IMG/VR virus record: IMGVR_UViG_3300025536_000010
Span: 1 to 64,000 of that record
Direction: 5' to 3' (one strand)
DNA length: 64,000 nt
In this document: one piece after another, positions 39,401 to 57,210 of the stretch
Position numbering within the stretch: the stretch's first letter is position 1
How the letters are laid out: every line of letters begins with the position of its first letter
The notes under the pieces: model-generated
Seen by the model: the letters and a program-made list of their open reading frames with translations, nothing else
What the model was told of the DNA's origin: nothing
The model's database searches: none
Position numbers and translations under genes: made by a program

Positions 39401-39970
39401 TTGATCGAAGACCTGCTCAAGACCTACGCCTACAAGACGGGCGAGTTCACCCTCGCTTCGGGACAGACGTCCGACGAGTACCTGGACGTCAAGGAAGCCA
39501 TGCACCACCCCTACGCCGCGCGCCGGCTGGTACAGTGCGTGCTGGATGAGTTCGTCGGCACCGAGATCGCCCTGGCCGGCGTGGCGGACGGCAGCATCGC
39601 CATCGCCGCCGTTGCCGTCTACGTTCGCAACTTGTACTCGCCGCAATCGTGTCACCTGCTGACAATCCTCAAGGAGCGCAAGCAACACGGCACCAAACAG
39701 CAGATCGTGGGCCTGGACAACCTCAAGGATTTCAAGAACGACTACAGGTTCGTTGGGATCATTGAGGATGTCTGGACCACGGGCGAGTCGACGGCCAAGG
39801 CGATCCGCGCAGCTCAGGCGGAAGGATTGAACGTACGCCAGTGCGTGGCCGTCGTCGACCGCGAGGCGGGCGCTGTGGCGCGGCTGACGAAAGAGTTCCC
39901 CAAGATTGTCTTCTCCGGCGTTACGACGCTCAAGGCCGTCCGCGACGGCAAGCGCTGGCATGAGGGCTAA
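39401..39970 (+). CDS. pyrE: Orotate phosphoribosyltransferase
   Basis: GEFTLASGQTSDEYLD, RKQHGTKQ, PRPP-binding IEDVWTTGES, AVVDRE; TTG start. Confidence 0.88.
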   Translation: MIEDLLKTYAYKTGEFTLASGQTSDEYLDVKEAMHHPYAARRLVQCVLDEFVGTEIALAGVADGSIAIAAVAVYVRNLYSPQSCHLLTILKERKQHGTKQQIVGLDNLKDFKNDYRFVGIIEDVWTTGESTAKAIRAAQAEGLNVRQCVAVVDREAGAVARLTKEFPKIVFSGVTTLKAVRDGKRWHEG

Positions 39971-39984
39971 AAGCCGTTTTTGAG
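39967..39984 (+). repeat. Dispersed AAAAGCC-nn-TTTT motif copy
   Basis: CTAAAAGCCGTTTTTGAG overlapping the pyrE stop. Confidence 0.7.
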
Positions 39985-39999
39985 AACACCGCTTCACAG

Positions 40000-40035
40000 A
40001 AAACCACCCTCCCTACGGAGAGGCGTGGTTTTTTT
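40000..40035 (+). terminator. Intrinsic terminator
   Basis: AAAACCAC..CTCC-CTAC-GGAG..GTGGTTTT followed by a T run. Confidence 0.7.
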
Positions 40036-40097
40036 CTTAGCTATTAGGTAGACTCGCATTTGATTCAGAGATGTCTCAAAGGCCAGGGAGGGCTACC

Positions 40098-40895
40098 ATG
40101 CCACGGCAGGCACTGTGCGTCGGCGTCAACTACGCCAACACCGAGTTCGAGCTGCGCGGCTGCGTCAACGACGCGAACGACTGGGCGCAGTTTTTCGACA
40201 AGCGCGGCTTCTCCACGTCCGTCCTGACCGAGAACCAGGCGACCCGCCAGAACATGCTCGCGGCGATGGAGAGCCTGGTGCGGCAACTGCAACCGGGTGA
40301 GATCGGGGCGATCCAGTTCAGCGGCCACGGCACCTGGCTGCCCGACCGAGACGGGGACGAACCGGATGGCCGAGACGAGGCCCTGGTGCCGCACGACGTC
40401 ACCGACGACGGCCGCGGCCTCATCATCGACGACGAGTTGCGTGTTATCTTCGGCCGGCTCCGCGAGGGCGCACGGCTCCTGTGGATCTCGGACTGCTGCC
40501 ACTCGGGTACGGCTTTCCGCTTCTTCGGCAACGGTGCCTCCAAACGCCGCGTACGCTTCTTGCCGCCGTCTCACTTCCTGGTCGATACCGGCCTGGTGCG
40601 TCGCATGGAGCGGGCCTACGGTCAACCGCCCAAGCGGACCAACGCAGCTCTACCTGGCGTTCTCCACCTTTCGGGCTGCCGCGATCACGAGTACAGCGCC
40701 GACGCCGAGATCGACGGCCGGTTCAGCGGGGCGTTATCCTACTACGCTTTGCTGGCGTTCAAGCAGGTAGTCCAGCAGAAGGGCACCTACCAGGACGTCC
40801 ACAAACTCGTCCGCCAGTACCTGCCCAGTTGGGACTTCCAGCAGACCCCGCAGCTGAATGGCGCGACGGCCTTGAAACGGACGCCGCTGTTCTAG
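40098..40895 (+). CDS. Metacaspase (peptidase C14)
   Basis: ALCVGVNY, LRGCVNDA, FSGHG (His), DGRDEALVP, SDCCHSG (Cys). Confidence 0.92.
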   Translation: MPRQALCVGVNYANTEFELRGCVNDANDWAQFFDKRGFSTSVLTENQATRQNMLAAMESLVRQLQPGEIGAIQFSGHGTWLPDRDGDEPDGRDEALVPHDVTDDGRGLIIDDELRVIFGRLREGARLLWISDCCHSGTAFRFFGNGASKRRVRFLPPSHFLVDTGLVRRMERAYGQPPKRTNAALPGVLHLSGCRDHEYSADAEIDGRFSGALSYYALLAFKQVVQQKGTYQDVHKLVRQYLPSWDFQQTPQLNGATALKRTPLF

Positions 40896-40928
40896 TACAC
40901 TCAGACCGTCTTGCCTCCTCTGTTCCAG

Positions 40929-40969
40929 CCTCGTCAGTGGGTCCGCCCCGCTGGCGAGGTTTTTCTTTG
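40929..40969 (+). terminator. Intrinsic terminator
   Basis: 13-bp stem CCTCGTCAGTGGG/CCCGCTGGCGAGG followed by TTTTTTCTTT. Confidence 0.8.
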
Positions 40970-41047
40970 CGCCGGGCTAAATAAGCGGTAGGGTTGTGTC
41001 ACAATAAATGATGGGAATCCCTACCCTTTTATCCTGGAGAGCGCTAC

Positions 41048-41296
41048 ATGCCCGGCATCCTACTCTTCGTGGCCAGCAACGATGCCCCCAAGCCTAACAG
41101 GCGCTGCAAGCGCTGCTGCTGTCAGATCGACAAGGGGCTGTTCCTGTGCCTGTCTTGTGAGGAGGTCGTGGCCTACTGGAGTCAGCTGGGCGAGTGTCCT
41201 AACTGCACAGGTCACATCAACCAGGCACGCAAAAGTAAGTTTTGCCCGCACTGCGGCGTGCCTCTGCGTAACCCCAAACCGCGGAAGAAGCAGTAA
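41048..41296 (+). CDS. Zn-ribbon protein
   Basis: Multiple CxxC pairs. Confidence 0.6.
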   Translation: MPGILLFVASNDAPKPNRRCKRCCCQIDKGLFLCLSCEEVVAYWSQLGECPNCTGHINQARKSKFCPHCGVPLRNPKPRKKQ

Positions 41297-41332
41297 CTTT
41301 TCCCTGTTCCGTGTTCCCGAAAGGAGCGGTCG

Positions 41333-42340
41333 ATGTTTGACAACATGAGGCGCGTTCTGTGCGCGACCCACGACGGCATCTTCCACGCAGATGACGTTGT
41401 GTCTTTTGCCTTGTTGACGCTGCTGCACAGGTTTCTGCCGGGCTTCCCCACGCCGCAGCTAACCCGCACCCGCGACCCGAAAGTGCTGGGCGAGCAGCAC
41501 ATCGTTTTCGACGTCGGCGGGGAATATGAAGTCGTCCGCGCGCACAACGTCTACCGTCTCGATCATCATCAGCGCGGCGGCGCCGGGTTGCGGCCTAACG
41601 GCGTACCCTACGCCGCAGCGGGGCTGATGTGGAAGACGTTCGGCCTCGAACTCTGTGGGGCAATGGCTGCGGAGCACGCCCTGTCCGTGCTGCACGACAA
41701 CGCCGTGTTCGAGAAGTTCGATCAGCAGTTCATTCAGCCGATTGACGCGAACGACTGCGGCTTCGAGATGGCCAGGGACTGGGAAGTACCGACGCTGCGC
41801 CCGCTTACGCTCAGCAGCATCATCTCTGGGTTCAACCCACGTTGGGATGAGGACATGTCGGCCGCCGAATCGCTGCGCAGGTTTGGCGCGGCAGCACAGG
41901 TGGCGCGTACGAGCATCGAACACGCGCTGGGCGGCATGCTGGCGGCGAAGAAGGCTGCGGACATCGTCCGCGACAGCGACCGCGTTTTCGCTGACAAGGT
42001 ACTGGCGCTTGGGCGTTTTTGTCCGTGGACCGAAGCCGTCCTGGAGAACGTAACCATGACCGACATCTTGTACGTCGTCTACAAACAGCCGGGCGAGGGG
42101 CAGCCGACCTGGATGGTTCAGTGCGTGCCGTGCTCGCTGGGCTCGTTCAGCAAGCGGAAGGCCCTGCCCGAGCCGTGGGCTGGGCTCCGCAGCAAGGAGG
42201 AGACGAAGGGCGACGGCCCGACCATCGAGGCCGTCAGCGGTGTCGCGGACGCCGTTTTCTGTCATCCAGGCCGCTTTATCTGCGGTGCGAAGTCCAAGGC
42301 CGGCGCTCTCAAGCTCGCTGAGATCGCGGTTATGACGTAA
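41333..42340 (+). CDS. MYG1-family (DHH-like) exonuclease
   Basis: THDGIFHADD, FDVGG, DHHQ, AAGLMWK, IDANDCG, FCHPGRF. Confidence 0.9.
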   Translation: MFDNMRRVLCATHDGIFHADDVVSFALLTLLHRFLPGFPTPQLTRTRDPKVLGEQHIVFDVGGEYEVVRAHNVYRLDHHQRGGAGLRPNGVPYAAAGLMWKTFGLELCGAMAAEHALSVLHDNAVFEKFDQQFIQPIDANDCGFEMARDWEVPTLRPLTLSSIISGFNPRWDEDMSAAESLRRFGAAAQVARTSIEHALGGMLAAKKAADIVRDSDRVFADKVLALGRFCPWTEAVLENVTMTDILYVVYKQPGEGQPTWMVQCVPCSLGSFSKRKALPEPWAGLRSKEETKGDGPTIEAVSGVADAVFCHPGRFICGAKSKAGALKLAEIAVMT

Positions 42341-42379
42341 CCTGCACGAGCCACCCCACCTGCTACGGGGACCGGCTCG

Positions 42380-42434
42380 GCAGGCAGACAACGAGGCGCT
42401 TCATGCGCCCTTAGTTGTCTGCCTGCTTTTCTTT
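42380..42434 (+). terminator. Intrinsic terminator
   Basis: GCAGGCAGACAAC/GTTGTCTGCCTGC perfect 13 bp plus inner stem, followed by TTTTCTTT. Confidence 0.8.
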
Positions 42435-42497
42435 ACCCATCACCCGGATTTGAGTACCATCGAAGTAGTGACCACCCCACTTCCTATGGAGATCCCG

Positions 42498-43124
42498 ATG
42501 GTCATGGAACGACCGCTACGGGAGTTTTTGGCGGCAGTCGACAGTCGGAAGCCATTCGCACTGAGCCGCTGGGGGGAGCACGAATGGCACTGCATCTTCG
42601 GCGAGCGAAACGGCTTCATTCCGCCAGACGGGCACGGGTATTTCCCGGCCCTCTGCCGCGACCTGACGGCCGTGCTGCATAGTCGACCAGATTACCGCCT
42701 GGGTATCCCTGCCGAAGCCTACAGCGACCGGGTGCGCAGCTATATCGACGGCTGCGCTCTGGACGATCTGGATTGGCAAGTCGACGTCCTCAAACTCACA
42801 CACGTCGATCAACTGTTAGGGCTGGTCGGGGCCGTATCGCGCGTGCCCCTGTTGGTGGTCGGCCCGCCGCGCCTGCGTAAGTCAAAAGCGCTCCTGCGCT
42901 GGCGGGCCTTCGTAGACGTGCCGCCGCGGAACTCGTACTTGTGCCGCGACGACATAGTTCGTAACGTGTTGGCTGCTTTGGAGGACTTCAAGGTGCCCGC
43001 TCTGGTATCGGTATCGGCCGGTGTCACGGCACCGCTAATCATCAACGACCTCGCCCGTCGTCCCGGAGGCTGCCGGCATCAGCTGGTCGACTTCGGCTCG
43101 CTCTGGGAGTCCTTCGGCGGCTAA
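42498..43124 (+). CDS. GT-D fold (DUF1792-like) glycosyltransferase-like protein
   Basis: KPFALSRWGEHE, LLVVGP, VSAG..A..II, LVDFGS. Confidence 0.55.
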   Translation: MVMERPLREFLAAVDSRKPFALSRWGEHEWHCIFGERNGFIPPDGHGYFPALCRDLTAVLHSRPDYRLGIPAEAYSDRVRSYIDGCALDDLDWQVDVLKLTHVDQLLGLVGAVSRVPLLVVGPPRLRKSKALLRWRAFVDVPPRNSYLCRDDIVRNVLAALEDFKVPALVSVSAGVTAPLIINDLARRPGGCRHQLVDFGSLWESFGG

Positions 43125-43141
43125 GCAAGGAGGTGTGCGTA

Positions 43142-43324
43142 ATGACCGATCAAGTCCCGCTGGCGGACGTGATTAACCTACTCTGGCGACAGGGACAGAA
43201 ACGGGTCGAGAACAACCAAGCGAAGACCAAGGACGGGGCGGCCGAGCCGACGTGGCCCACGCCCGCCGACCCACCAACCGTTATCACCCGGCCGGAGCAT
43301 CGCCCAAAGGTGCAAGGCACATGA
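43142..43324 (+). CDS. Small hypothetical protein
   Basis: RBS AAGGAGG. Confidence 0.55.
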   Translation: MTDQVPLADVINLLWRQGQKRVENNQAKTKDGAAEPTWPTPADPPTVITRPEHRPKVQGT

Positions 43325-43632
43325 ACGACAGGAAGTTCAAAAAGTCGCTGGCCAACCCGAACTCTTACGGGAACCGGAAGGCCGCGAAGAAGGCCGCCAA
43401 GCAGGACGCGAAACGGGAGAAGAAGGAGCTTCGCAAAACCTACCCCGGGTGGTTCAAGGTAACCGGCCAGGCCATCTGCGGGTGTTGCGAGGCCGTCCTC
43501 TACTACGAAACCCGCGCTCGGGCCGAGGCCGCGTGCAAGAAAGTCACCAACAAGCACGCGCTCATGGTAGACGACGCCGGGAACGAAGAGATGGTGGACG
43601 GCTTTTACGGTTTCACAGTGGAGCAAGTATGA
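43321..43632 (+). CDS. Basic hypothetical protein
   Basis: ATGA overlap; Lys-rich; CGCC motif. Confidence 0.6.
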   Translation: MNDRKFKKSLANPNSYGNRKAAKKAAKQDAKREKKELRKTYPGWFKVTGQAICGCCEAVLYYETRARAEAACKKVTNKHALMVDDAGNEEMVDGFYGFTVEQV

Positions 43633-44279
43633 GCAAGATTATCGTCGCCCTGGACGGCATGACCTGGAGCAAGAGCCTGCACATGGCCATGCAACTCAAG
43701 GAGTGCGTCTGGGGGTTCAAGCTGAACGACCTCCTGCTGGAGTATGGCGTCAGCGCCGTCCGGGAGTTCAAAAAAGTCGGGCCGGTCATGGCCGACCCCA
43801 AACTCCACGATATTCCCAACACGGTCGGTAACGGCGTCCGCCGGCTGCACGCGGCCGGTGCCGACCTCATCACGGTCCATGCCTCCGGCGGCCTGGACAT
43901 GCTCACCAACGCGGTTGCCCTGGCCGGCGAGGCGAAGATCCTGGCGGTCACCGTACTGACCAGCCTGAACGACCACGGCTGCGAGTACAGCTACGGCGGC
44001 AACGTCCGCAACACGGTTCGCCGGTTTATGGACCTGGCCAACCGCGCCGGCGTCGCAGGCGTAGTCTGCTCGCCGCAGGAGGAAGACCTGGCCGCCGAGG
44101 TGCCGAATCTCATCAAGGTAGTCCCCGGCATCCGCCTACCCGATCAGCGCGTCGACGACCAGGCACGCACCGGGCTGCCGAAGTGGGCCAACTACGTCGT
44201 GGTTGGTCGACCCATCACGCAGGCCGCGGACCCCATCGCCGCGGCGCACGAGATCAACAAGGCCCTGGAGGCAGCATGA
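43629..44279 (+). CDS. pyrF: Orotidine-5'-phosphate decarboxylase
   Basis: IVALD, DPKLHDIPNT signature, TVHASGG, AVTVLTS, VVCS, VPGIR, VVGRPIT. Confidence 0.95.
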   Translation: MSKIIVALDGMTWSKSLHMAMQLKECVWGFKLNDLLLEYGVSAVREFKKVGPVMADPKLHDIPNTVGNGVRRLHAAGADLITVHASGGLDMLTNAVALAGEAKILAVTVLTSLNDHGCEYSYGGNVRNTVRRFMDLANRAGVAGVVCSPQEEDLAAEVPNLIKVVPGIRLPDQRVDDQARTGLPKWANYVVVGRPITQAADPIAAAHEINKALEAA

Positions 44280-45460
44280 AGAAGCTCGACCCAGACACCC
44301 TGCCGGAGACGTTCGAGATCCCGGCCATGTTCGATGCCCACGTTCACTTCCGCGAACGCGAGGCGCTTTACGTCCTGGTCCCGCAAACCGCCCGGGTGTG
44401 CGACCGCGCGCTGGTGATGCCCAACACCAGCACGCCCATTACCGATGGCAGGCTCGCCAAGACCTACCGCGAGTGCATCGTGCAGGTTGCCGAGGAGGCC
44501 GGCTTCCCGGACTTCAACCCGCTGATGACGCTCTACCTGGAACCGGACACGCCTTACCGAACGATCCAGGAGGCCGTCCGGCTGTGCGGTAAGCACCTGG
44601 CCGGCGTGAAAATCTACCCCAAGGGCGGCACGACCAACAGCGACAAGGGCATCCCTATCGACTGGCTGTACAAGCCTGGCGTGCAGGACCACGTCAACTC
44701 GATGCCGCCCTGGCTCCGCGATACCTTGAAAGCCATCGCGGGCGAGGGCCTGGTACTCAACGTCCACGGCGAAGACCCCGAACAGGAACTGCTCGAACGC
44801 GAAGGTAAGTTCATGTGGTCGGGGTTCGCCGAGTGGTATCTGGAGACGCACAAGGGAGCCCGCCTGGTCCTGGAGCATGTATCAACCGACTCGGGCTTGG
44901 ACCTGGTTGACCGTCTGGCCAAGAAAGGGCACCAGATCGCGGCGTCTCTAACGCTGCACCACTGCTACGACACTGTCGACAACGCTTATCGACAGTGCCA
45001 CAACTGCTGCTGGCCGCCGCCGAACTACCGCCGACATCGGGACGCGGTGCGGGCCAAGGCCCAGTGCGCCTTTACGGTCAACCCCACAGACGCGCTCGTG
45101 TTCCTGGGGAGCGATACGGCCGCGCACACGGTCGCGTCCAAAGAGCGAGCCGTTTGTGCCTGCGGCGACTATACGGCGCCGCTGCTGGCCGAGAAGTTGG
45201 CTGAGATGTTCGCCGAGCCGTCGTGGATCGACATGGGCCGGACGCTGCCGTCGCATGAGCGGCGGATGACCGTGTTCACCAGCACCAATGCCGCGGCGTT
45301 CTACAACGTCGAGGGCTCAGGACGGAAAATCCACCTGGTCAAGCGCCCGTGGACCGTACCACAACGGATGCACGGCGTCGTGCCGTGGCAAGCAGGCAAG
45401 GAAGTGCTGTATCGCGTGGAAGGAGAACCGCGATGGCTCAAGACGGGGGACTGGTTATGA
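44276..45460 (+). CDS. pyrC: Dihydroorotase (type II)
   Basis: DAHVHFR, VMPN, VKIYPKGGTTNS, VHGE, EHVST, GSDTAAH. Confidence 0.92.
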   Translation: MKKLDPDTLPETFEIPAMFDAHVHFREREALYVLVPQTARVCDRALVMPNTSTPITDGRLAKTYRECIVQVAEEAGFPDFNPLMTLYLEPDTPYRTIQEAVRLCGKHLAGVKIYPKGGTTNSDKGIPIDWLYKPGVQDHVNSMPPWLRDTLKAIAGEGLVLNVHGEDPEQELLEREGKFMWSGFAEWYLETHKGARLVLEHVSTDSGLDLVDRLAKKGHQIAASLTLHHCYDTVDNAYRQCHNCCWPPPNYRRHRDAVRAKAQCAFTVNPTDALVFLGSDTAAHTVASKERAVCACGDYTAPLLAEKLAEMFAEPSWIDMGRTLPSHERRMTVFTSTNAAAFYNVEGSGRKIHLVKRPWTVPQRMHGVVPWQAGKEVLYRVEGEPRWLKTGDWL

Positions 45461-45804: not shown

Positions 45805-45823
45805 AAATCTTTGAACCCGGTGC

Positions 45824-45852
45824 TTGACAGGGGTCAAACCCTGGCATAACCT
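45824..45852 (+). promoter_or_regulatory. Sigma70 promoter
   Basis: TTGACA-N17-TAACCT with AT-rich upstream tract. Confidence 0.75.
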
Positions 45853-45891
45853 ATCATCTGGTGCGACTGACTGGGCGACGGTTGCGCCGGA

Positions 45892-46050: not shown

Positions 46051-46065
46051 GCGCCCGGAGCAAAC

Positions 46066-46992: not shown

Positions 46993-46998
46993 TCTCCC

Positions 46999-47042: not shown

Positions 47043-47057
47043 CGCAATCGGGTTTGC

Positions 47058-47284: not shown

Positions 47285-47285
47285 A

Positions 47286-48353
47286 ATGGCTGACGGGCAG
47301 CGTATCGCTGGTACAGCGCGCATCCCCGTTGCAGAGATGGCCAAAGACAATCTGCAACACATTTTCCCCCACCTTACGCCCGAACAGATCGAGGCGATGA
47401 AAGCCGGCAAGCCGGTCCCGCCGTCGCCGGATTGGCAAGGCAGTACGACAGCGCCAGTCTCCAGCGGTGCAGCGTGCGAGATCCCGCGTCGGCAAGAGCC
47501 AGAAGCCGCTCAGGTCGACCTGACGGGCTTGCCGGCTCCGGTTATCGCGGAGAACGAGCACCTGCCGCTGGTGACCTGCATTCTCGTTTTTGGCATCCGC
47601 GAGCGGTTGCGGATGGCGCGCAAGGCGGTCAACCAGTTCGTCCGTCAGCATTACCCGCGCAAGCAGTTGGTGATCGTCAACACCACCGACCTCGACGTCA
47701 CCAACCGGCCGCACCCGGCGATCAAGGAGCGCAAGGTCTTCACCGGGCAAAAGCTGCCGACCGGACAGATGCGCAACCAGGGCATGGACCTGGCGGACGG
47801 CGACTGGATCGTGCCTTGCTGGGACGATGACGACTACTACGATCCCTGGCGGCTCGTCTACCAGATGTGTCTCCGGCGTCCCGGGCACGCGGTCCTGCTG
47901 ACGAACCAGATCCGCGTCCACATCGACAGCACTACGGCGTTCATGCACCACCAGGCCGAGGGCATCCCGAACACGATGCTCGTCCCGAACCTGCCCGAGA
48001 CGCGCTTCGACGAGGAGGCGCAGATCGGCGAAGACCTGGCGTTCTGGATGAAGCACTACGGCGTCAAAACGGTCATCGCCAACAACGTCGAGTTCCCGCT
48101 CAATCATCTCTCGATGGCCGCCTACCACGGCCACAACATTACGCCGGTCGGCGAGTTCATGCGCGGCTATCACGGACCCGAGCACCAGGGGCACATTTAT
48201 CTGCCCCCGGAAGAGATCGACAACCTGCGCACTATCCTCAGCGACTTTGGCGTGCAACTGTCTACGACGCCTCCGGGGGAGGCGTCTGGCGACCAAGGTC
48301 CGGCAGGCTCGCCAGAGCCCGCTGAGACGAGCGAGGTCGCCATTCTCTCCTAG
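47286..48353 (+). CDS. Glycosyltransferase family 2 with N-terminal extension
   Basis: PLVTCIL, QHYPRKQLVIVN, RNQG..LADGDWI..WDDDDY. Confidence 0.8.
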   Translation: MADGQRIAGTARIPVAEMAKDNLQHIFPHLTPEQIEAMKAGKPVPPSPDWQGSTTAPVSSGAACEIPRRQEPEAAQVDLTGLPAPVIAENEHLPLVTCILVFGIRERLRMARKAVNQFVRQHYPRKQLVIVNTTDLDVTNRPHPAIKERKVFTGQKLPTGQMRNQGMDLADGDWIVPCWDDDDYYDPWRLVYQMCLRRPGHAVLLTNQIRVHIDSTTAFMHHQAEGIPNTMLVPNLPETRFDEEAQIGEDLAFWMKHYGVKTVIANNVEFPLNHLSMAAYHGHNITPVGEFMRGYHGPEHQGHIYLPPEEIDNLRTILSDFGVQLSTTPPGEASGDQGPAGSPEPAETSEVAILS

Positions 48354-48380
48354 TCCGTCCCAGTGGCAGAAAGGGCAGGT

Positions 48381-49178
48381 ATGAGCATCGTGGCGCAAAG
48401 CCAGGGCGTCCTGAACTTCGTCGTTACGGGTGAGATCAGGAGCGGCGCCTCCGTCGTGCAATCGAGTATCGACGGACGAGCCGACTGTGTCTGCCATGCA
48501 GACCTGTTCCACCCGGACGACGCCGTGCGGCGAGAAGCCCATGAGGGCTACTTCGGCCCCAGCAAAGACCCGGAACGGATGCCCGAGTGGTTCAAGGATG
48601 GCGAGACGGTGCCTTTCCAGTACATCAACCACGCGGTACTGGACAACCCCATGCAAGGAGAATGCGCAGTCGGTTTCAAAGTTTTGTACCCGGCTGTGCG
48701 CAGGTGGGAACTGTTTGAGTTGTTTGAAGAACGGTGCCGAGAAGGTGATTTCTGTTTGGTGCATGTCGCTCGAAACCCGGTGGCCTGTTTCGTAAGTCTC
48801 AAGCAGGCCGAGCAGTCTGGTGTGTGGGCGCGGGGCTGGAACAGCTTGCGGCAAACAAGCTGCCCCAGCGCCGTCACCGTGGATGCAGGCGAGTTGATAG
48901 CGTTCTGTCGCAACCACGCCTCTCTCTACGGCAAAATCCGTGCCGCATGTAAGGACTCCTTGGAAATCTCCTACCGGGACGTACTGCTCGACTACCAGGA
49001 CACCATGCGGAAGGTGTTTAAGTTCCTGGAACTCCCCGAGTCCGACGAGCCAGCCGTGCCCGGCTGCCGCCGGCTCAAGAACCGGGACATATTGGCAAGG
49101 ATCGCTAACCTGAACCGGCTGCGCAGCGAGGTGCCTTCGGACATCCGCGCGCTGCTGGACGACGAGGAGTTACTCTGA
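48381..49178 (+). CDS. Sulfotransferase (Stf0-like)
   Basis: FVVTGEIRSGAS (5'-PSB loop), VGFKVLY, HVARNPVACFVS (3'-PB), ISYRD. Confidence 0.75.
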   Translation: MSIVAQSQGVLNFVVTGEIRSGASVVQSSIDGRADCVCHADLFHPDDAVRREAHEGYFGPSKDPERMPEWFKDGETVPFQYINHAVLDNPMQGECAVGFKVLYPAVRRWELFELFEERCREGDFCLVHVARNPVACFVSLKQAEQSGVWARGWNSLRQTSCPSAVTVDAGELIAFCRNHASLYGKIRAACKDSLEISYRDVLLDYQDTMRKVFKFLELPESDEPAVPGCRRLKNRDILARIANLNRLRSEVPSDIRALLDDEELL

Positions 49179-49705
49179 TGCGCCGCAACCGCGCGCTGTG
49201 GTGGTCTATCGTTTCCCTGGTCGCCGGCATCGCCACCAGCATTGCGCTAGTGGCGGTGGTGACGCACCCGGAACCCAGACCACCGGCCGCGGCGCAGCGC
49301 AGCGAACTGCCGCACGTCGAACAGGGCACAGAACCGGCCGCAGCCGGTCCCCGGCGTATGCCGGTGGCCGGGGCGCCGGGATACTGGGTCGTGGTCAACA
49401 CGGACGGTTCGAGCTATCTGGAAGGACCGGACGGTCAGCGCACAGCGCTGGCCGCTGCCGGCCCTTCGGTCCCGGAGCAGCGCGTCGCCGACGCCATCGC
49501 TAAACGACTTGCCAAGACCCCCGAGAAACGTAAGGGCCTGGGCCAGTTGGTGGTGTGCGATAGTGGCGTGGTGGATGTGCCGAAAGACGCCATCATCACG
49601 TTCGTCGGTGTCGACAAAGTCGTCACCCTCGATCCGAACGATGGTTCTTCGACGGCCCACTACGTCGATGGTCGCGTGCAGCGCCGGGAGCGTGTGGAGC
49701 GTTAG
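49178..49705 (+). CDS. Membrane-anchored hypothetical protein
   Basis: N-terminal TM helix; TGATG coupling. Confidence 0.65.
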   Translation: MRRNRALWWSIVSLVAGIATSIALVAVVTHPEPRPPAAAQRSELPHVEQGTEPAAAGPRRMPVAGAPGYWVVVNTDGSSYLEGPDGQRTALAAAGPSVPEQRVADAIAKRLAKTPEKRKGLGQLVVCDSGVVDVPKDAIITFVGVDKVVTLDPNDGSSTAHYVDGRVQRRERVER

Positions 49706-49762
49706 GTCACGGTGGCCTAATGCTGCGCGATGCAAGGAATATCCCTGGAAGGAGTGCTCTCC

Positions 49763-50317
49763 ATGTCCCTTAGCACGGTTGCTGCGATCATCGTCCAGAC
49801 CCCGAAGGTGTTCAGCTGGCTGGGTCACATGCCCGTCATGACCTGGTCCCTCAACCAACTGCTCGAAGTCCGCGGCGTCGACCGGATCGTCTGCGTCGCG
49901 GTCCCCGATCTTGCTGCCCGCGCCGGGCGGATACTGGTCAAGGACGAGATCGAGGTGACCACCATCCCCGACAACGTGAAAGACCAGACCACGCTGCACA
50001 AATGGTTGTGCGCTGCCAACGGTCCCGCGGCCACGGCTGACGTCCTGGTTGCCATCAAGCCGACCGCGCCGTTTTTGCCCTCCGCCAAGATCGAGGCGTG
50101 CCTGCACAAGGTCAAGCGCTGCAAGAACTGCGATCATTGCACGCTGCACCGCTACGCCACTGTTGACAGCCTCCAAGTCTTTAAGGTACAGGCAGTGATC
50201 GAATCCGTGGCGCTCCAGCGGGCCGCGGTGCCGGTGAGTCTGATCGAGTCGCTCGACGTCACCGACCCCGAAGGGCTCCGCGTGGCCACCGCCCTGGTCG
50301 TTAGCGGCACGGCTTGA
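49763..50317 (+). CDS. Cytidylyltransferase-like (NeuA/KdsB fold), degenerate
   Basis: LGHMPVMTWS, VDRIV, KPTAPFL..IEAC, ESLDVTDPEG; the canonical N-terminal ARxGSK loop is absent. Confidence 0.6.
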   Translation: MSLSTVAAIIVQTPKVFSWLGHMPVMTWSLNQLLEVRGVDRIVCVAVPDLAARAGRILVKDEIEVTTIPDNVKDQTTLHKWLCAANGPAATADVLVAIKPTAPFLPSAKIEACLHKVKRCKNCDHCTLHRYATVDSLQVFKVQAVIESVALQRAAVPVSLIESLDVTDPEGLRVATALVVSGTA

Positions 50318-50356
50318 CCGTTTCCCCGGAAGCCAGCATTCAGGAAGGATAGCTCA

Positions 50357-51277
50357 ATGGCCGAACTACCGCTCGTCTCTTGCCTGTGCGCCAGCAGCCC
50401 CAAACGGTGGGCGCAGTTGCAGCGGGCCATCCTGGACTTCACCAGGCAGACCTACCCGAACAAGGAACTCATCATCGGCGTTGACCTGCGCACAGACTTC
50501 GCCGGCATGATCGAATTGTTCGTGGAAGACGCGCTGGCCAGCGTGCCGCCGACGCGCGTGCATGATGGCGAGCGGATCATCCGCGACCTGCCCTACCGGA
50601 TCAAAGTGTTCGGCCGCCCCAACAGTAACTCGCCGATGGACTGCCTGATCCAGGCGCTCTGTCACGCCCGCGGCGACATCGTTGCCCTTTGGGACGACGA
50701 TAACCTCAACCTGCCGAGCCGCTTGACGGATCAGGTGGTTCGGCAGCAACGGCACCAGGATACACTCACGGCGCTCTCGGAATGCCTGTACTACTTCCAC
50801 GAGAGCAAAGAGTTGTTCGTGGTGAACCACGAAAACCCGGAGGCCGAGGTCAGCGAGCGCATCGCTATCTCGTCGCTCATGAGCCCGCGCGACGCGCTGC
50901 CAGCGTTGGAGCCGCACTATCGAACCAACCCAGCGTTGCACTTGGTCAACGGCCTCCAGGCGCGCAACCGCAAACTGCTGGGCATCACCGGCAAGCCGTT
51001 TCACCACCTAGTCGGCGTGTCGGGCGACAACCTGCGCGGCTACAGCGACCATCGTAAAATCGCGCAGGGTCACTCGCGTTCGGCGGACTGGATCAATGAG
51101 CGCGCGGATGCGCTTGTTGAAGCGCTGAACCAGTATTACTGGGACGCGGACAAAGTGAACGTCGTGGGCGCGGATGCCCTGGCGTTTGAGTACACCCCCA
51201 AGCTACGACATTCCAAAGACCTCTACGAAATCGCTATCAAGGACGCCGAAGCCGAAGAGGTCGTCAGAGAGGATTGA
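50357..51277 (+). CDS. Glycosyltransferase family 2
   Basis: PLVSCL, QTYPNKELII, ARGDIVALWDDD...RL..Q. Confidence 0.8.
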   Translation: MAELPLVSCLCASSPKRWAQLQRAILDFTRQTYPNKELIIGVDLRTDFAGMIELFVEDALASVPPTRVHDGERIIRDLPYRIKVFGRPNSNSPMDCLIQALCHARGDIVALWDDDNLNLPSRLTDQVVRQQRHQDTLTALSECLYYFHESKELFVVNHENPEAEVSERIAISSLMSPRDALPALEPHYRTNPALHLVNGLQARNRKLLGITGKPFHHLVGVSGDNLRGYSDHRKIAQGHSRSADWINERADALVEALNQYYWDADKVNVVGADALAFEYTPKLRHSKDLYEIAIKDAEAEEVVRED

Positions 51278-51312
51278 CCATGCCAATGATCGCTGTCCAA
51301 GGAGGGACACGA

Positions 51313-51525
51313 ATGAGCGCTCCCACCAATCTGAGCGAGCGCGAGCGGGACGTCCTGCACGGTATCGTGGAGGACAAAACCTACCGAGAGATCGCGGCCG
51401 GCATGGGCGTCTCTACCGAGACGGTGAAAACCTATGCCAACCGCCTCCGGCGCAAGCTCGGCATCAACAGCAAGACGGGGCTGGCTTTGTGGGCCGCCTC
51501 ACACCTAGACGCCTATGGGTTTTGA
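51313..51525 (+). CDS. Stand-alone LuxR-type HTH regulator
   Basis: LSERERDVL..TYREIA..MGVSTETVKTY..RLRRKLG. Confidence 0.9.
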   Translation: MSAPTNLSERERDVLHGIVEDKTYREIAAGMGVSTETVKTYANRLRRKLGINSKTGLALWAASHLDAYGF

Positions 51526-51528
51526 ACC

Positions 51529-52026
51529 ATGTGGACCATTTTGAAAAATATCACGGACTGGACGCAGTACCAGGGGACCGCTGCTCGGCAGCTGCATCTG
51601 GTCGGCGTGCAGATCGAGTGGGGCAAAGGTCCGAAAGAGTTCCCCTGCCTGGTCACCACTTATTGCCCCGACCCGGCCCCTGGTAAGCAGCCGACTCTCA
51701 TCTCCGCGTACGTCTATCAGTCGGACGCAGAGGCCCTGCTCAAGGCCGCTGGCGTGACCACGGCACCGCCCAGCACAGAGCGTGCAGCACTCCCGCCCGG
51801 CGTCGTCGACGCCAAGCAGGCTCAGTTCAACCGCTGGGTGTCGGCCCACCTGCTGGCGCTGGTGCAGCAGCTGGTCGACCGTAAAGAAGTGTTCAGCCGC
51901 AAGGACTATGAAGAGAGCCTGGATGAGGGGCTCGACGCCGTGCGGCACTGGGGTAACGCGGCGGCGCGCAAGATCCTCTCCGAAGACCAACGTACTCTGC
52001 TGGATCGGCTCGAACCGCCTGGGTAA
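51529..52026 (+). CDS. Hypothetical protein
   Basis: ORF in operon context. Confidence 0.65.
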   Translation: MWTILKNITDWTQYQGTAARQLHLVGVQIEWGKGPKEFPCLVTTYCPDPAPGKQPTLISAYVYQSDAEALLKAAGVTTAPPSTERAALPPGVVDAKQAQFNRWVSAHLLALVQQLVDRKEVFSRKDYEESLDEGLDAVRHWGNAAARKILSEDQRTLLDRLEPPG

Positions 52027-52050
52027 AATACCTTCAACACAGAGCCCGTC

Positions 52051-52069
52051 CTAAAAGCCGGTTTTTGGA
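52051..52069 (+). repeat. Dispersed AAAAGCC-nn-TTTT motif copy
   Basis: CTAAAAGCCGGTTTTTGGA, intergenic. Confidence 0.7.
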
Positions 52070-52080
52070 GGCTGAGCGCA

Positions 52081-53985
52081 ATGCGGGACGGTTTCTGGAG
52101 GAGGTTACTCATGCCCTGGCAATCGGAAGCGGACTTCGTCAAAACTGCTGGGCAGTCTGGCCACGCCGGGCTGCCCAACAAACACATCCACGTCGACACG
52201 GCCAAACAGCCCTCCGTCTCCGAACAGACGGAGGGTCAGCTGTACTCCGACATCGTCGCCAAGTTAATCGACGTCGAGCCGCGCATGTGCTGCCCTAACT
52301 GCGGCGCACGCGCACACGACATCAAAGACGGTGGCCAGGTTTACACCCGCGACATCTTGGAGTCGGGCGGGAAAACACACAAGGGCGACATCCCCAAGTG
52401 TCCGATCCCCGGCCTGGACATCCCGACGATGGCATACACGGTTAGTCCGTGCGGCTGCCGCGTAAGCGTGGAATGGGCCGGGGCGTTCGCGGCCGAACTC
52501 CAGAGCCGCCTGGGTGGCAGTAAACCGGCCCCCATCATCGGCGTCACGCCCAAACAGCGTGAGTTCAAACTGAACAAGCTGGAGGCGGACCTGGCGAGGC
52601 TCTACGCTCTCCAAGACAAAGCAACCGGCGCGCAGAAAGAGGCCGTCGACTACTGGATCGTGGTCGTCGCTGACCAGATCCAGCGGCTCTGTCCCGGCAA
52701 ACACAACCAGCAACCGTTGCCGAAGAAACTGGAGCCCGAAGTGATCCAGTGGGCCGTCAAAAACGCGCACAGTCAGCCGACCGCGCAGGTCACGACGACG
52801 CCCTACTACCCGTTGTTGGCAAGCCAGGGCGGTGCGCTACCGGCGGGTACGCCGCTTTACCAGAGCGCGAGCGGAGCCATGAGCACCGTACCTGTTTACA
52901 GCGGACAAAAACCAGCCGGACACTACGCAGTGCCCGGCCACCCGAACCCTACGGAGCAAACCGACGAGCATCCGAACTGGTCGGCTTGGGGTTACCCGCC
53001 AGGCTACAAGATGCCCAAGAACCTTGGGGTCGCCGCGCGCGTGGCGCAGGACAAGCTGGCAAACACCACGGCGAATCAGGCGGACGCACTGGCCCTGGCG
53101 ATACAGATGACGCAAGCTGGCATAATGAGTGCCACCAGCGTCGGCAAACTGGTCGGCGTCGACCTCGGCAAGGAGAAAACACAGTTCGTGAAGGGTAACG
53201 TCGGCAAAGTCCACAGCGTCAACGTCTACGTTATCCACGGTGAGTACGTCGTGCGGATCGAGACGGAGGCGTTCGAGCCCGTCGAGCGCAAGTTTGGCTC
53301 CCTGGCTGCGTGCATTGCCTACGCCAAACAGCTGAACGACAACCGACACACCAATCCTATCCTGGGTGCGGTGGCTGAGTTGCTATCGCGGCGTTTGAGC
53401 GAGATCCAAAACGCCCAGAAGGCGGCCAACCTGACGAACACGTCGGGTGTACCGCCGTTCAAGACGACCAAATTCACGCCGTCGCCGAACAAGGTCGTCC
53501 TGCACGGAGCCAACGCCGAAGAAACGTCGGTCTATGCGAAAGCAGCGTCGTCGCTGGACGAGATGCTCGGTGCGCTGGGCGTCCCGACCATCGTGCCGGG
53601 ACAGCCGGCGGCGACTCAATACACACCGGCCGACGTCAAGAAGATCCTGAGCTACTTCACCACGCACCAGGGCACCATCTACGGCGTCGTTAGTCAGTAC
53701 CTGCTACCGGCCGGCAGCGCTACGCCGACACTCACGTTGCTGGAGACGGTCGACGAGATCGCTAACAACTTGCGGCAGCACACCGAGAAAGGTATGTCCC
53801 TATCGGCGCTGTCCAAGCAGTTCCTTACGGCCTGGCGGCAGGCAATCGAGATCGGGAAGAAACTCCTCCCCGACGTCCAGGAGGTTGATGCGCCCGCGCC
53901 TACCACAACGCCGGCCCCGCAGCGGGTCGACGTCCGCGGGAAGCGGAAGCGGCGGACTATCCGCCAGATCGAGGATAACGAATGA
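52081..53985 (+). CDS. Large hypothetical protein with N-terminal Cys cluster
   Basis: RBS GGAGG; CCPNC..SPCGC. Confidence 0.7.
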   Translation: MRDGFWRRLLMPWQSEADFVKTAGQSGHAGLPNKHIHVDTAKQPSVSEQTEGQLYSDIVAKLIDVEPRMCCPNCGARAHDIKDGGQVYTRDILESGGKTHKGDIPKCPIPGLDIPTMAYTVSPCGCRVSVEWAGAFAAELQSRLGGSKPAPIIGVTPKQREFKLNKLEADLARLYALQDKATGAQKEAVDYWIVVVADQIQRLCPGKHNQQPLPKKLEPEVIQWAVKNAHSQPTAQVTTTPYYPLLASQGGALPAGTPLYQSASGAMSTVPVYSGQKPAGHYAVPGHPNPTEQTDEHPNWSAWGYPPGYKMPKNLGVAARVAQDKLANTTANQADALALAIQMTQAGIMSATSVGKLVGVDLGKEKTQFVKGNVGKVHSVNVYVIHGEYVVRIETEAFEPVERKFGSLAACIAYAKQLNDNRHTNPILGAVAELLSRRLSEIQNAQKAANLTNTSGVPPFKTTKFTPSPNKVVLHGANAEETSVYAKAASSLDEMLGALGVPTIVPGQPAATQYTPADVKKILSYFTTHQGTIYGVVSQYLLPAGSATPTLTLLETVDEIANNLRQHTEKGMSLSALSKQFLTAWRQAIEIGKKLLPDVQEVDAPAPTTTPAPQRVDVRGKRKRRTIRQIEDNE

Positions 53986-54854
53986 TCGAGAAACTCATTA
54001 TCGGAGCCCCGTTCGGGAACTATCTGCACTTCGCCTACACCACGCCGACCCTGGGCACTTACACCAGTTACTACCGGGGCGGCTTCTGGAAGCGCGTGTG
54101 GCGCGTGCTGACGACGGTGCGCTACTATCCAGGCATCCAAGCCTGGAAAAACAAACTGGGCCTGCCTAACCCCAGCATCCGGCGGCTGACCGAACTGTGT
54201 GGGCCGCCGGCGCACAGCCATATCAGGGCGACCACGCCGCCCAAGCTGATCGTCAAGGACAAGATCGTTTCGGTCACCGGACACAACGACGTACAGTGGG
54301 AGACAGTGATCGTCACGGCGGCTGACGCCAAACCAGCCATGATTGAGATGAACGTGGGCTGCCCCAACTGCCCAGGCGACGACGCTACGCAGGATTATCC
54401 CAAGGTGTTCGCCTGGGCGTCGGAATACTGTTTTCGCAAACAGGTGCCGCTCTGTCTCAAACTGCCGCCGGTCAGCTTCATGCGGATCGTCCGGCAGGCC
54501 GTCGACGGCGGCATTTGCCGCTTCCACTGCTGCAACACGTTACCCACGCCTGGCGGTGGGATGTCGGGCAAGCCGCTCAAGCCCCTGGCCCTCCAGGCGA
54601 GCGAGTATGTACGGAACTACTGCTACGCCCGCAGCTACGCCCTGGACATGCTGATTGGCGGCGGCGGGGTCACACACGCCCAGGACGCGCAGGACTTCCT
54701 CGGCGTGGGCTGTACCAACGTGGCCGTGGCCTCCGTTTTGTTCAACCCGCTCAACTGGCCGCGGGTCCGCCGGATCGCTCACGACCTCTACCTGCGAGAC
54801 GCCCCGCCGCCGCAACCGGCACCGGCGGTCAAGGACGTCGAGCAGCTGCTTTGA
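53982..54854 (+). CDS. pyrD: Dihydroorotate dehydrogenase (class 1-like)
   Basis: NKLGLPNP, EMNVGCPN (catalytic Cys loop), LKLPP, NTL, GGMSG, IGGGGV. Confidence 0.85.
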   Translation: MIEKLIIGAPFGNYLHFAYTTPTLGTYTSYYRGGFWKRVWRVLTTVRYYPGIQAWKNKLGLPNPSIRRLTELCGPPAHSHIRATTPPKLIVKDKIVSVTGHNDVQWETVIVTAADAKPAMIEMNVGCPNCPGDDATQDYPKVFAWASEYCFRKQVPLCLKLPPVSFMRIVRQAVDGGICRFHCCNTLPTPGGGMSGKPLKPLALQASEYVRNYCYARSYALDMLIGGGGVTHAQDAQDFLGVGCTNVAVASVLFNPLNWPRVRRIAHDLYLRDAPPPQPAPAVKDVEQLL

Positions 54855-57159: not shown

Positions 57160-57210
57160 GTTAGACTCCTTTCACGTCGAAGTGAGCCCTCCAATGACCA
57201 GCAACGCATA

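What the first reader, a model, noticed from the sequence alone, without database searches (positions are those of the whole stretch)
39401..54854. Four consecutive steps of de novo UMP synthesis (pyrC, pyrD, pyrE, pyrF) in a phage-like genome
Seen: catalytic motifs intact in all four genes, which sit in three separate places (pyrE; pyrF-pyrC; pyrD) among orphans rather than in a bacterial pyr operon. carAB and pyrB are not in this window. Established: these enzymes convert carbamoyl-aspartate to UMP, whereas phage nucleotide genes usually cover salvage and reduction. Inference: a near-complete auxiliary pathway feeding NrdJ and possibly the UDP/CMP-sugar demand of the glycan island.
Basis: partly seen in the sequence, partly recalled or inferred. 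Interest (0 to 1): 0.7.

Follow-up and report, generated by a model that had tools for sequence, protein, structure and literature searches.

The report
Jumbo phage encodes four UMP-synthesis enzymes
A complete 235-kb phage genome from a subsurface metagenome carries intact genes for four consecutive steps of de novo UMP synthesis (PyrC, PyrD, PyrE, PyrF), a set shared with related huge phages and far fuller than the single pyrE known from cyanophages.

Summary
pyrE (39401-39970), pyrF (43629-44279), pyrC (44276-45460) and pyrD (53982-54854) are all there, uninterrupted, on the + strand. Each has the catalytic motifs of its family.

The genome is viral and complete. It is a 234.8-kb assembly that closes on itself and was recovered identically by independent assemblers. 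It has a large terminase, tail fibres, split multisubunit RNA polymerase genes and a PhuZ-like tubulin, and no tRNA genes were found.

Six-frame searches of the whole genome find no pyrB, carB, pyrH, pyrG, ndk, tmk, prs or pyrK. The phage therefore covers carbamoyl-aspartate to UMP and relies on the host before and after.

A syntenic 239-kb relative has all four genes. Three other relatives have subsets, and the published SR-VP_PHAGE_62_16 has pyrE plus pyrD.

PyrD belongs to a compact, divergent DHOD clade. It occurs in 78 IMG/VR contigs, including huge phages and giant-virus MAGs, and otherwise only in a few Phycisphaerae.

Most likely role: raising pyrimidine supply for phage RNA and DNA synthesis, upstream of the phage's class II RNR, dCTP deaminase and ThyX. 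The link to glycosyltransferases is conserved in gene order but untested. This is a fuller variant of a known kind of auxiliary metabolism.

The parts
39401..39970 (+). pyrE, orotate phosphoribosyltransferase, 189 aa, TTG start behind GGAG
   Evidence: TIGR00336 5.1e-27 (94.7 bits, cut-off 106.8). PDB OPRTs 2yzk, 2wns and 5hkf at 1e-8 to 1e-11. Motifs: FTLASG 16-21, SDEYLD 24-29, loop KERKQHG 91-97, PRPP motif IIEDVWTTGES 120-130, VVDRE 151-155.
43629..44279 (+). pyrF, OMP decarboxylase, 216 aa
   Evidence: PF00215 2.5e-38. TIGR01740 120.5 bits, above its cut-off. PDB OMPDCs 1.6e-24. Residues D9, K31, D56-x-K58-x-x-D61 and GRP 193-195.
44276..45460 (+). pyrC, type II (homodimeric-type) dihydroorotase, 394 aa; its ATG overlaps the pyrF stop (ATGA)
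   Evidence: TIGR00856 4e-51 (174 bits, cut-off 293). PDB 4lfy 5.8e-34. H22, H24, R26, N50, K112, T119-T120, H164, H201, D280 and H284 are invariant in the seven-member phage clade.
52081..53985 (+). 634-aa orphan whose stop overlaps the pyrD start (ATGA). Its N-terminal part (residues 36-205) is 37% identical to the 377-aa protein at the same place in relative L018
   Evidence: No Pfam, NCBIfam or PHROG match, and a poor Atlas model. Homology. It is not conserved in L027, so it is probably not an obligate PyrD partner.
53982..54854 (+). pyrD, compact class-1-like dihydroorotate dehydrogenase, 290 aa
   Evidence: PF01180 9.3e-14. AlphaFold model pLDDT 92.5. All of the 50 listed best PDB matches are DHODs (TM 0.60-0.67). 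N57, N124, C127, N129, K160 and N185 are invariant in 43 homologues.
40927..40961 (+). Terminator-like hairpin (15-bp stem plus T run) closing the pyrE and caspase-like gene pair
   Evidence: A consensus match only.
54963..54998 (+). Terminator-like hairpin (14-bp stem, 11 GC, T run) 110 nt after pyrD
   Evidence: A consensus match only.
47286..51277 (+). Context. GT2-like, sulfotransferase-like and GT2 genes lie between pyrC and pyrD. Relatives L018, L027 and L112 keep GT2 or sulfotransferase-like genes next to pyr genes
   Evidence: PF00535 and PF13469 (weak or faint). Synteny.
59445..61811 (+). Context. Class II (B12-dependent) ribonucleotide reductase with ATP-cone, RTPR-like, a likely downstream consumer
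   Evidence: PF03477 and PF02867. TIGR02505 2.7e-57, below its cut-off.

Best explanation
A complete jumbo phage genome of about 234.8 kb encodes four soluble, stand-alone enzymes for the third to sixth steps of de novo UMP synthesis.

1. Host CarAB and PyrB make carbamoyl-aspartate.
2. Phage PyrC, a type II zinc dihydroorotase, closes the ring.
3. Phage PyrD, a compact FMN enzyme with a cysteine base and no PyrK partner, oxidises dihydroorotate to orotate. Its electron acceptor is unknown.
4. Phage PyrE adds host-made PRPP.
5. Phage PyrF decarboxylates OMP to UMP.
6. Host PyrH, Ndk and PyrG then make UTP and CTP.
7. Those nucleotides serve the phage RNA polymerases, the phage class II reductase, the dCTP-deaminase-like protein and ThyX, and possibly UDP-sugar-using glycosyltransferases.

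The likely benefit is more flux through steps that the host expresses at low, tightly repressed levels. The host's feedback-controlled entry enzymes would open by themselves as UTP and CTP fall during infection.

Shown: gene presence, intact catalytic residues, viral and complete genome, conservation in relatives. Inferred: activity, acceptor, flux benefit.
For: **Enzyme identity and intact residues:**

**Viral and complete genome**
- Large terminase is 27% identical to Salmonella phage Arash gp1, E 4e-42.
- Tail fibres and RNA polymerase beta/beta' genes.
- Tubulin.
- No tRNA genes in genome positions 62001-234886, and no Rfam family match in the window.
- The ends overlap by 131 bp, and an independent contig bridges them.
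- ENA, JGI and Logan assemblies are 100% identical over the region at even depth.

**Conservation**
- L018 (a 239-kb contig) is syntenic and has all four: F 50%, E 39%, C 42%, D 48% identity.
- L111 has E, F and the start of C. L112 has F-C overlapping. L027 has C and D.

**PyrD is a real DHOD**
- It is the only DHO_dh homologue found in a 4.1-Mb Phycisphaerae MAG, where it lies among housekeeping genes.
- It is adjacent to pyrC in the unrelated element L019.

**Downstream phage genes:** RNR; DCD and ThyX.

**Composition:** the genes match the genome.
Against: - No expression or activity data exist. No RNA run holding the phage was listed.
- Three of the four proteins score below NCBIfam's curated equivalog cut-offs.
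- PyrD lacks the short stretch that carries the conserved beta-2 lysine of canonical class 1 DHODs. The role of that lysine in FMN binding is from my memory of L. lactis DHODA work.
- PyrD has no recognisable electron-transfer partner.
- The pathway depends on host enzymes at both ends, because no pyrB, carB, prs, pyrH, ndk or pyrG was found. The net gain in flux is therefore an inference.
- The published relative SR-VP_PHAGE_62_16 seems to manage with pyrE and pyrD only.
Confidence: 0.72

Rival explanations
1. Same enzymes, different selective reason. The set insulates the phage from host nucleotide-starvation responses, meaning shut-off of pyr operons or pyrimidine depletion by defence systems. 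It acts as a counter-defence rather than a simple booster.
For: Lactococcus represses its pyr operons 2- to 36-fold within 15 minutes of sk1 infection, which the authors interpret as starving the phage (PMC10986495). The phage brings its own RNA polymerases, so its pyr genes escape host transcriptional control. It also carries an Acb2/Tad1-hairpin protein, a known anti-defence fold.
Against: pyrB and carAB, the most strongly repressed genes in that study, are not supplied by the phage. The host of this phage is unknown. This reading is not exclusive of the main explanation.
Confidence: 0.3
2. The module mainly supplies UTP for UDP-sugars used by the glycosyltransferases with which it is interleaved, for a glycan on the virion, the host surface or DNA.
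For: GT2 and sulfotransferase-like genes lie between pyrC and pyrD here, and GT2 or sulfotransferase-like genes lie beside pyr genes in L018, L027 and L112. More GT and methyltransferase genes lie at 1210-3077 and around 28-33 kb. A PfkB kinase and a cytidylyltransferase-like protein lie elsewhere in the genome.
Against: Gene order alone is weak evidence. The donor sugars of the GTs are unknown. No UDP-sugar pyrophosphorylase or epimerase turned up among the family matches listed for the genes scanned, which was not a complete annotation. Nucleic-acid synthesis in a 235-kb phage is a far larger pyrimidine sink.
Confidence: 0.15
3. The divergent PyrC, PyrD and PyrE act on a non-canonical substrate and build a modified pyrimidine nucleotide for phage DNA or RNA.
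For: PyrC, PyrD and PyrE fall below the curated equivalog scores and form their own clades. PyrD has deletions near the flavin site. The RNA polymerase's distant relatives include PBS1 and YerA41; from my own knowledge, those phages carry unusual DNA bases.
Against: All substrate- and metal-binding residues of the canonical enzymes are kept. PyrF is an ordinary bacterial-type OMPDC, about 50% identical to cellular ones. The phage has ThyX and a UDG-superfamily protein, which fits normal thymine DNA. The same PyrD type is the sole DHOD homologue found in a bacterium.
Confidence: 0.06
4. The pyr genes are cellular DNA: a chimeric contig, a mis-binned bacterial fragment, or decaying passengers.
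For: The record is labelled linear by IMG/VR, and all data are metagenomic.
Against: Three assemblers give identical sequence across the region at even depth. The ends overlap and are bridged. Flanking genes are phage genes shared with relatives that carry the same pyr genes. Reading frames and catalytic residues are intact. GC3 matches the genome.
Confidence: 0.02

Closest known systems
pyrE (orotate phosphoribosyltransferase) as an auxiliary metabolic gene of marine cyanomyophages (PMC9983427, PMC4022391)
   Same: A phage-encoded enzyme of de novo UMP synthesis, interpreted as boosting nucleotide supply for replication.
   Different: That case is one step only. Here there are four consecutive steps, in a high-GC subsurface jumbo phage, with a divergent OPRT: only 3 representative clusters reach E <= 1e-30 among 1.84 billion.
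Huge phages of Al-Shayeb et al. 2020 (PMC7162821), in particular SR-VP_PHAGE_62_16 (231,505 bp, vernal-pool mud)
   Same: The paper states that many huge phages carry de novo purine and pyrimidine genes. SR-VP_PHAGE_62_16 has about the same size and GC. It has the same local order: GroES, then OPRT; a GerE-like HTH, two orphans, then compact DHOD; then CsrA. Its DHOD has the same N-terminal motif.
   Different: Only OPRT and DHOD are annotated there, with an adenine phosphoribosyltransferase between them. No pyrF or pyrC motif was found in the stored part of the file. The module is not discussed in the text.
Giant-virus pyrimidine genes (Fadolivirus DHOD 1A plus OMP decarboxylase, PMC8490762; GVMAG contigs in IMG/VR)
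   Same: Virus-encoded DHOD, sometimes with OMPDC or dihydroorotase nearby. The GVMAG DHODs belong to the same compact type: full-length matches starting at residues 2-7.
   Different: These are viruses of eukaryotes with 24-36% GC and 25-32% identity. One or two steps are seen within 10 kb, never four.
Bacterial pyr enzymes: E. coli-type homodimeric dihydroorotase, Lactococcus class 1A/1B DHOD, OPRT, OMPDC
   Same: The folds and catalytic residues match. The predicted chemistry is the standard route from carbamoyl-aspartate to UMP.
   Different: There is no pyrB, carAB or pyrK, and no operon. PyrD is 20-40 residues shorter: it lacks the beta-2 lysine stretch and about 17 residues after the NT(L) motif, and it has an 8-residue insert. 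PyrC is in a seven-member clade on a long stem.
phiKZ-like (nucleus-forming) jumbo phages
   Same: A tubulin/PhuZ-like gene and split multisubunit RNA polymerase genes.
   Different: No chimallin-like match was found (which is a weak test). The nearest cultured relatives by RNA polymerase and terminase are Salmonella phage Arash and Vibrio phages, at only 27-31% identity. None of those carries pyrC.

Membership tests
Dihydroorotase, type II / homodimeric (PyrC; TIGR00856) | Binuclear-metal ligands: HxH, carboxylated Lys, His, His, Asp. Substrate residues: Arg, Asn, His, and the Thr-Thr loop. | tested here: met
   H22/H24, K112, H164, H201, D280, R26, N50, H284 and T119-T120 align with PDB 4lfy and are invariant in alignment A4. 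The residue roles are from my knowledge of E. coli DHOase.
Dihydroorotase, type II / homodimeric (PyrC; TIGR00856) | Score above NCBIfam's curated equivalog cut-off | tested here: not met
   174 bits against a cut-off of 292.95. There is no Pfam Amidohydro hit at E <= 0.01. It is a divergent member, filed as homologous with function inferred.
Dihydroorotate dehydrogenase (PF01180), class 1 | FMN-binding TIM-barrel fold of DHODs | tested here: met
   The model has pLDDT 92.5. All 50 listed best PDB matches are DHODs, E 3e-13 to 2e-10, TM 0.60-0.67. Pfam score is 51.7, above the cut-off of 27.
Dihydroorotate dehydrogenase (PF01180), class 1 | Cysteine catalytic base in the N-x-x-C-P-N motif, four substrate-binding Asn, and Lys on beta-5 | tested here: met
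   N57, N124, C127, N129, K160 and N185 are invariant in 43 homologues.
Dihydroorotate dehydrogenase (PF01180), class 1 | Conserved Lys on beta-2 that contacts FMN (Lys43 of L. lactis DHODA, from memory) | tested here: not met
   The compact clade has a 5-residue gap where canonical sequences carry V/T-K. An invariant R32 lies close by, but whether it substitutes is unknown.
DHOD class 1B | PyrK iron-sulfur flavoprotein partner | tested here: not met
   No PF10418 match in six frames of the genome. The upstream coupled orphan is not conserved in relatives.
DHOD class 2 | Serine base and an N-terminal membrane/quinone domain | tested here: not met
   The base is Cys127. The protein starts directly at the first barrel strand.
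Orotate phosphoribosyltransferase (TIGR00336) | PRPP-binding acidic motif, flexible Lys-rich loop ending in HG, and the SG..S..Y.D and DR motifs | tested here: met
   IIEDVWTTGES 120-130, KERKQHG 91-97, FTLASG/SDEYLD 16-29 and VVDRE 151-155 align with OPRT structures.
Orotate phosphoribosyltransferase (TIGR00336) | Score above the curated cut-off | tested here: not met
   94.7 bits against 106.8. Pfam Pribosyltran scores 24.3 against 26.3. All of the best specific matches are OPRTs. Adenine and hypoxanthine PRT models reach only E about 0.015.
OMP decarboxylase (PF00215, TIGR01740) | The Asp, Lys and D-x-K-x-x-D catalytic array, the phosphate-binding GR, and the curated cut-offs | tested here: met
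   D9, K31, D56/K58/D61 and GRP 193-195. TIGR01740 scores 120.5, above 92.3; PF00215 scores 132.7, above 27.
Phage auxiliary metabolic gene set | Encoded on a bona fide, contiguous viral genome and kept in related viruses | tested here: met
   Terminase, tail fibres, RNA polymerase genes, closed assembly and independent contigs. Relatives L018, L027, L111 and L112.
Phage auxiliary metabolic gene set | Enzymes are expressed and active during infection | not testable with these tools
   No RNA run was listed. There is no isolate.

The most novel reading that the evidence does not exclude
The compact DHOD that lacks the beta-2 lysine is a virus-adapted enzyme. It is found in huge phages, giant-virus MAGs and only a few Phycisphaerae. 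It would use an electron acceptor other than PyrK or quinone. In this phage clade it is the core of a four-enzyme bypass. That bypass would keep UMP synthesis running independently of host pyr-gene repression and of the respiratory chain, making it a metabolic counter-measure to nucleotide-starvation defences.
Probability: 0.25. Interest if true: 0.7.

Novelty: new variant of a known kind. Interest (0 to 1): 0.55.

Why it matters
Phage nucleotide genes are usually thought of as salvage, reduction and thymidylate synthesis. The best-known de novo pyrimidine example is a lone pyrE in cyanophages. Here a complete phage genome carries two thirds of the UMP pathway, and relatives keep it.

The pattern of what is kept and what is left out points to where flux control may lie in an infected cell. 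Soluble stand-alone enzymes for steps 3-6 are kept. The allosterically regulated entry enzymes and all the kinases are left out.

The work also brings out a compact DHOD clade that is common in large viruses of both bacteria and eukaryotes yet nearly absent from cellular genomes. Its acceptor and flavin binding can be tested directly with recombinant protein. All four genes can be tested by complementing standard E. coli pyr auxotrophs.

Tried and rejected
- **GenBank phages.** Nucleotide search of pyrF-pyrC gave no match. The protein search gave four weak hits, all under 34% identity, that look like bacterial-type genes.
- **IMG/VR with PyrC.** PyrC alone found nothing. The clade alignment found 3 distant loci.
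- **PHROGs.** Nothing for PyrC, PyrF, the tubulin, the 642-aa junction protein or the neighbouring orphans. Most large structural candidates also gave nothing. Pfam Terminase_6N was not found; the terminase was identified through Salmonella phage Arash instead.
- **Cluster look-up for organism names** returned none.
- **The 634-aa protein coupled to pyrD** was considered as a hidden PyrB, PyrK or partner. It has no family match and a poor Atlas model. There is no counterpart in L027, and L018's counterpart shares only the N-terminal third.
- **Common donor for the four genes in Phycisphaerae.** Rejected. Seven Phycisphaerae genomes have no match to the phage's PyrC, and PyrF is about equally similar to many bacterial phyla.
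- **Host assignment.** This remains only a hint towards Planctomycetota. The cellular members of the PyrD clade are Phycisphaerae. In SR-VP_PHAGE_62_16 the best matches of DHOD and CsrA are Phycisphaera and Pirellula. The published taxonomic profile is 86% unknown.
- **RNA evidence.** None was listed.
- **Whole records of L018, L019, L025 and L027** are not held, so their pyrB status could not be checked.
- **Uracil-DNA idea** (from the distant PBS1 and YerA41 RNA polymerase hits). Set aside because ThyX and a UDG-family gene are present.

Full report
**What the window is.** The window is the first 64 kb of a 234,886-base IMG/VR virus record that CheckV rates as complete. GC is 62%, and about 210 of roughly 236 crude gene calls lie on the + strand.

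The last 131 bases repeat the first 131 with one mismatch at base 5. An independently assembled JGI contig from another data set runs across that junction. The genome therefore closes on itself at about 234,755 bp.

An ENA contig of 234,608 bp, two JGI contigs and a Logan contig of 94 kb are identical to it over the whole pyr region. Depth is flat at 24.6. The only listed DNA run is a subsurface metagenome.

**Is it a virus?** Yes, on several counts:
- A 796-aa protein at 169999-172389 (minus strand) is 27% identical over 561 residues to the annotated large terminase of Salmonella phage Arash, E 4e-42. Two Arash structural proteins also match.
- There are collagen-like tail-fibre proteins.
- Split multisubunit RNA polymerase beta and beta' genes lie at 66967-70113 and 72027-73787.
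- A tubulin/PhuZ-like gene lies at 3326-4603.
- No tRNA genes were found in genome positions 62001-234886, and no Rfam family matched in the window.
- Cultured relatives are remote: about 30% identity in the RNA polymerase to Arash and some Vibrio phages.

**The four genes.**

| Gene | Coordinates | Length | Best family evidence | Key residues |
|---|---|---|---|---|
| pyrE | 39401-39970 | 189 aa | TIGR00336 5e-27, just under cut-off; best solved relatives are OPRTs | PRPP motif, lysine-rich catalytic loop, orotate-site motifs |
| pyrF | 43629-44279 | 216 aa | Passes Pfam and TIGR01740 thresholds | D9, K31, D56-x-K58-x-x-D61, GR |
| pyrC | 44276-45460 | 394 aa | TIGR00856 4e-51; E 6e-34 to a solved dihydroorotase; no Pfam hit | All six metal ligands plus substrate residues |
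| pyrD | 53982-54854 | 290 aa | Passes the Pfam DHO_dh threshold | Cys base, four Asn, Lys160 |

pyrC starts on the ATGA that ends pyrF. It is an E. coli-type (homodimeric) dihydroorotase. Its metal and substrate residues are invariant in its clade of seven sequences.

For pyrD, an AlphaFold model built on 43 homologues has pLDDT 92.5, and all 50 listed best PDB matches are DHODs.

Gene starts agree with an independent gene caller. GC3 of the four genes matches the genome.

Terminator-like hairpins follow the pyrE and caspase-like pair (40927-40961) and pyrD (54963-54998).

**What is not there.** Six-frame family searches of the whole genome found none of the following: pyrB, carB, pyrH, pyrG, prs, pyrK, tmk, ndk. 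Positive controls rang in 9 to 14 of 14 reference genomes in each case.

The phage does encode several other nucleotide and DNA enzymes:
- an RTPR-like class II ribonucleotide reductase with an ATP-cone;
- a dCTP-deaminase-like protein, ThyX and NUDIX;
- a UDG-family protein, a family A DNA polymerase and a ligase.

So it covers carbamoyl-aspartate to UMP, and later reduction, deamination and methylation. Every phosphorylation step, PRPP, and the two regulated entry steps are left to the host.

**Relatives.**

| Locus | Source | pyr genes seen (identity to window) |
|---|---|---|
| L018 | 238,853-bp JGI contig, GC 67%, syntenic over 20 kb at 37-59% protein identity | F 50%, E 39%, C 42%, D 48% |
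| L111 | another sequencing run | E, F (61%), start of C |
| L112 | another sequencing run | F overlapping C (50%), followed by sulfotransferase-like and GT2 genes |
| L027 | contigs up to 220 kb | C (a different, longer-branched type) and D (46%), with GT2, GerE-like HTH, 2H-SAK, CsrA and RNR in the same order |
| SR-VP_PHAGE_62_16 | published, 231,505 bp, vernal-pool mud | OPRT and compact DHOD annotated, an adenine PRT between them |
| L019 | unrelated backbone | pyrC-pyrD adjacent |

SR-VP_PHAGE_62_16 shows the order GroES-OPRT and HTH-orphans-DHOD-CsrA. No pyrF or pyrC motif was found in the stored part of its file.

In IMG/VR, 78 contigs carry the compact DHOD. They include phage contigs up to 533 kb and many giant-virus MAGs. 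Within 10 kb of the gene, 70 show D alone, 7 show D plus F, and 1 shows C plus D. The four-gene state is thus rare, and so far specific to this clade.

**The compact DHOD.** A search of 5.8 billion proteins gave 386 homologues at E <= 1e-8. The 120 listed are 218-313 aa long.

On a tree these sequences form one clade, with SH-aLRT support of 99, separated by long branches from canonical class 1 enzymes.

Among 185,579 species genomes, only two loci fall in the clade, and both are Phycisphaerae MAGs. One lies between pheT and dsbD and is the only DHO_dh homologue found in that 4.1-Mb MAG. That argues the family does the pyrD job.

Compared with canonical sequences, the clade differs in four ways:
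- it lacks the five residues that hold the beta-2 lysine;
- it lacks about 17 residues after the NT(L) motif;
- it has an eight-residue insert after RGG;
- it has a shorter C-terminus.

The direction of transfer between Phycisphaerae and viruses cannot be read from an unrooted clade.

The four genes do not share one donor. Seven Phycisphaerae genomes have no match to the phage PyrC. PyrF is an ordinary bacterial-type enzyme, about 50% identical to sequences from several phyla.

**Mechanism.** The best-supported reading is a phage-run middle section of UMP synthesis that raises pyrimidine supply for a 235-kb genome and its own transcription.

All four enzymes are of the soluble, stand-alone kinds. 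PyrC is the type II dihydroorotase that needs no ATCase complex. PyrD is a class-1-like DHOD with no membrane domain and no PyrK. This suits expression from a foreign genome.

Omitting the feedback-regulated CarAB and PyrB makes sense if falling UTP and CTP levels during infection already de-repress those enzymes. That last step is inference from textbook regulation.

A counter-defence reading is compatible with this. It rests on the observation that Lactococcus shuts its pyr operons within minutes of infection (PMC10986495).

The glycosyltransferase link rests only on conserved gene order.

**Novelty.** Cyanophage pyrE is well known. Al-Shayeb et al. 2020 state in general terms that huge phages carry de novo pyrimidine genes, and they deposited a relative. 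Fadolivirus has a DHOD and an OMP decarboxylase.

I found no description of a phage with four consecutive steps, nor of the compact DHOD clade. PHROGs holds no family for this PyrC or PyrF. I rate it a new variant of a known kind, of moderate interest.

Noticed in passing
window 1-131 and genome 234756-234886: The record's ends repeat each other (131 bp, one mismatch at base 5), and an independent contig bridges them. The genome closes on itself although IMG/VR labels it linear. A 642-aa orphan gene spans the junction, so the first gene in the window is only its C-terminal part.
   Followed up: yes
window 3326-4603; genome 66967-70113 and 72027-73787: A tubulin/PhuZ-like gene and split multisubunit RNA polymerase beta/beta' genes are traits of phiKZ-like nucleus-forming phages. 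No chimallin-like protein was recognised, and cultured relatives (Salmonella phage Arash, Vibrio phages) are only about 30% identical.
   Followed up: partly
window 40098-40895: A caspase-like Peptidase_C14 gene (6e-23) lies directly after pyrE and before a strong terminator-like hairpin. The same pairing is seen in relative L111.
   Followed up: partly
window 41333-42340: A MYG1/UPF0160-family protein (6.6e-67), a family better known from cells than from phages.
   Followed up: no
window about 33112-33834: A protein with an Acb2/Tad1-hairpin domain (precomputed Pfam), a fold known from anti-CBASS and anti-Thoeris sponges.
   Followed up: no
window 56405-58453: A 2H-SAK phosphoesterase, a CsrA homologue on the minus strand (56956-57159) and an InPase/HAD-type phosphatase protein. 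The 2H-SAK, CsrA and RNR trio is conserved in L018 and L027. CsrA also follows the DHOD in SR-VP_PHAGE_62_16, where its best match is Pirellula.
   Followed up: partly
window 59445-61811; L018 and L027: The class II reductase is closer to the RTPR model (2.7e-57) than to NrdJ_Z, and it has an N-terminal ATP-cone. The orthologues in two relatives are interrupted by inteins (Intein_splicing, LAGLIDADG).
   Followed up: partly
window 37740-38141: A GroES/Cpn10 homologue lies upstream of pyrE. It is conserved at that place in L018, L111 and SR-VP_PHAGE_62_16.
   Followed up: partly
window 11343-16139: A 1598-aa open reading frame with no family match.
   Followed up: no
window 51313-51525: A small GerE/sigma-70-region-4 type HTH protein is conserved two genes upstream of pyrD in all relatives examined, which makes it a candidate regulator of the block.
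   Followed up: no
L019 (JGI 3300072492), 10001-15346: An unrelated high-GC element carries pyrC-pyrD back to back, next to a eukaryotic-type topoisomerase IB gene and a 1228-aa orphan. What kind of replicon it is remains unknown.
   Followed up: no
L025 (673-kb contig) and L113 (533-kb IMG/VR contig): The compact DHOD also sits in very large contigs full of orphan genes. These are probably megaphages, and no other pyr gene lies within 8 kb (L025) or 10 kb (L113).
   Followed up: partly
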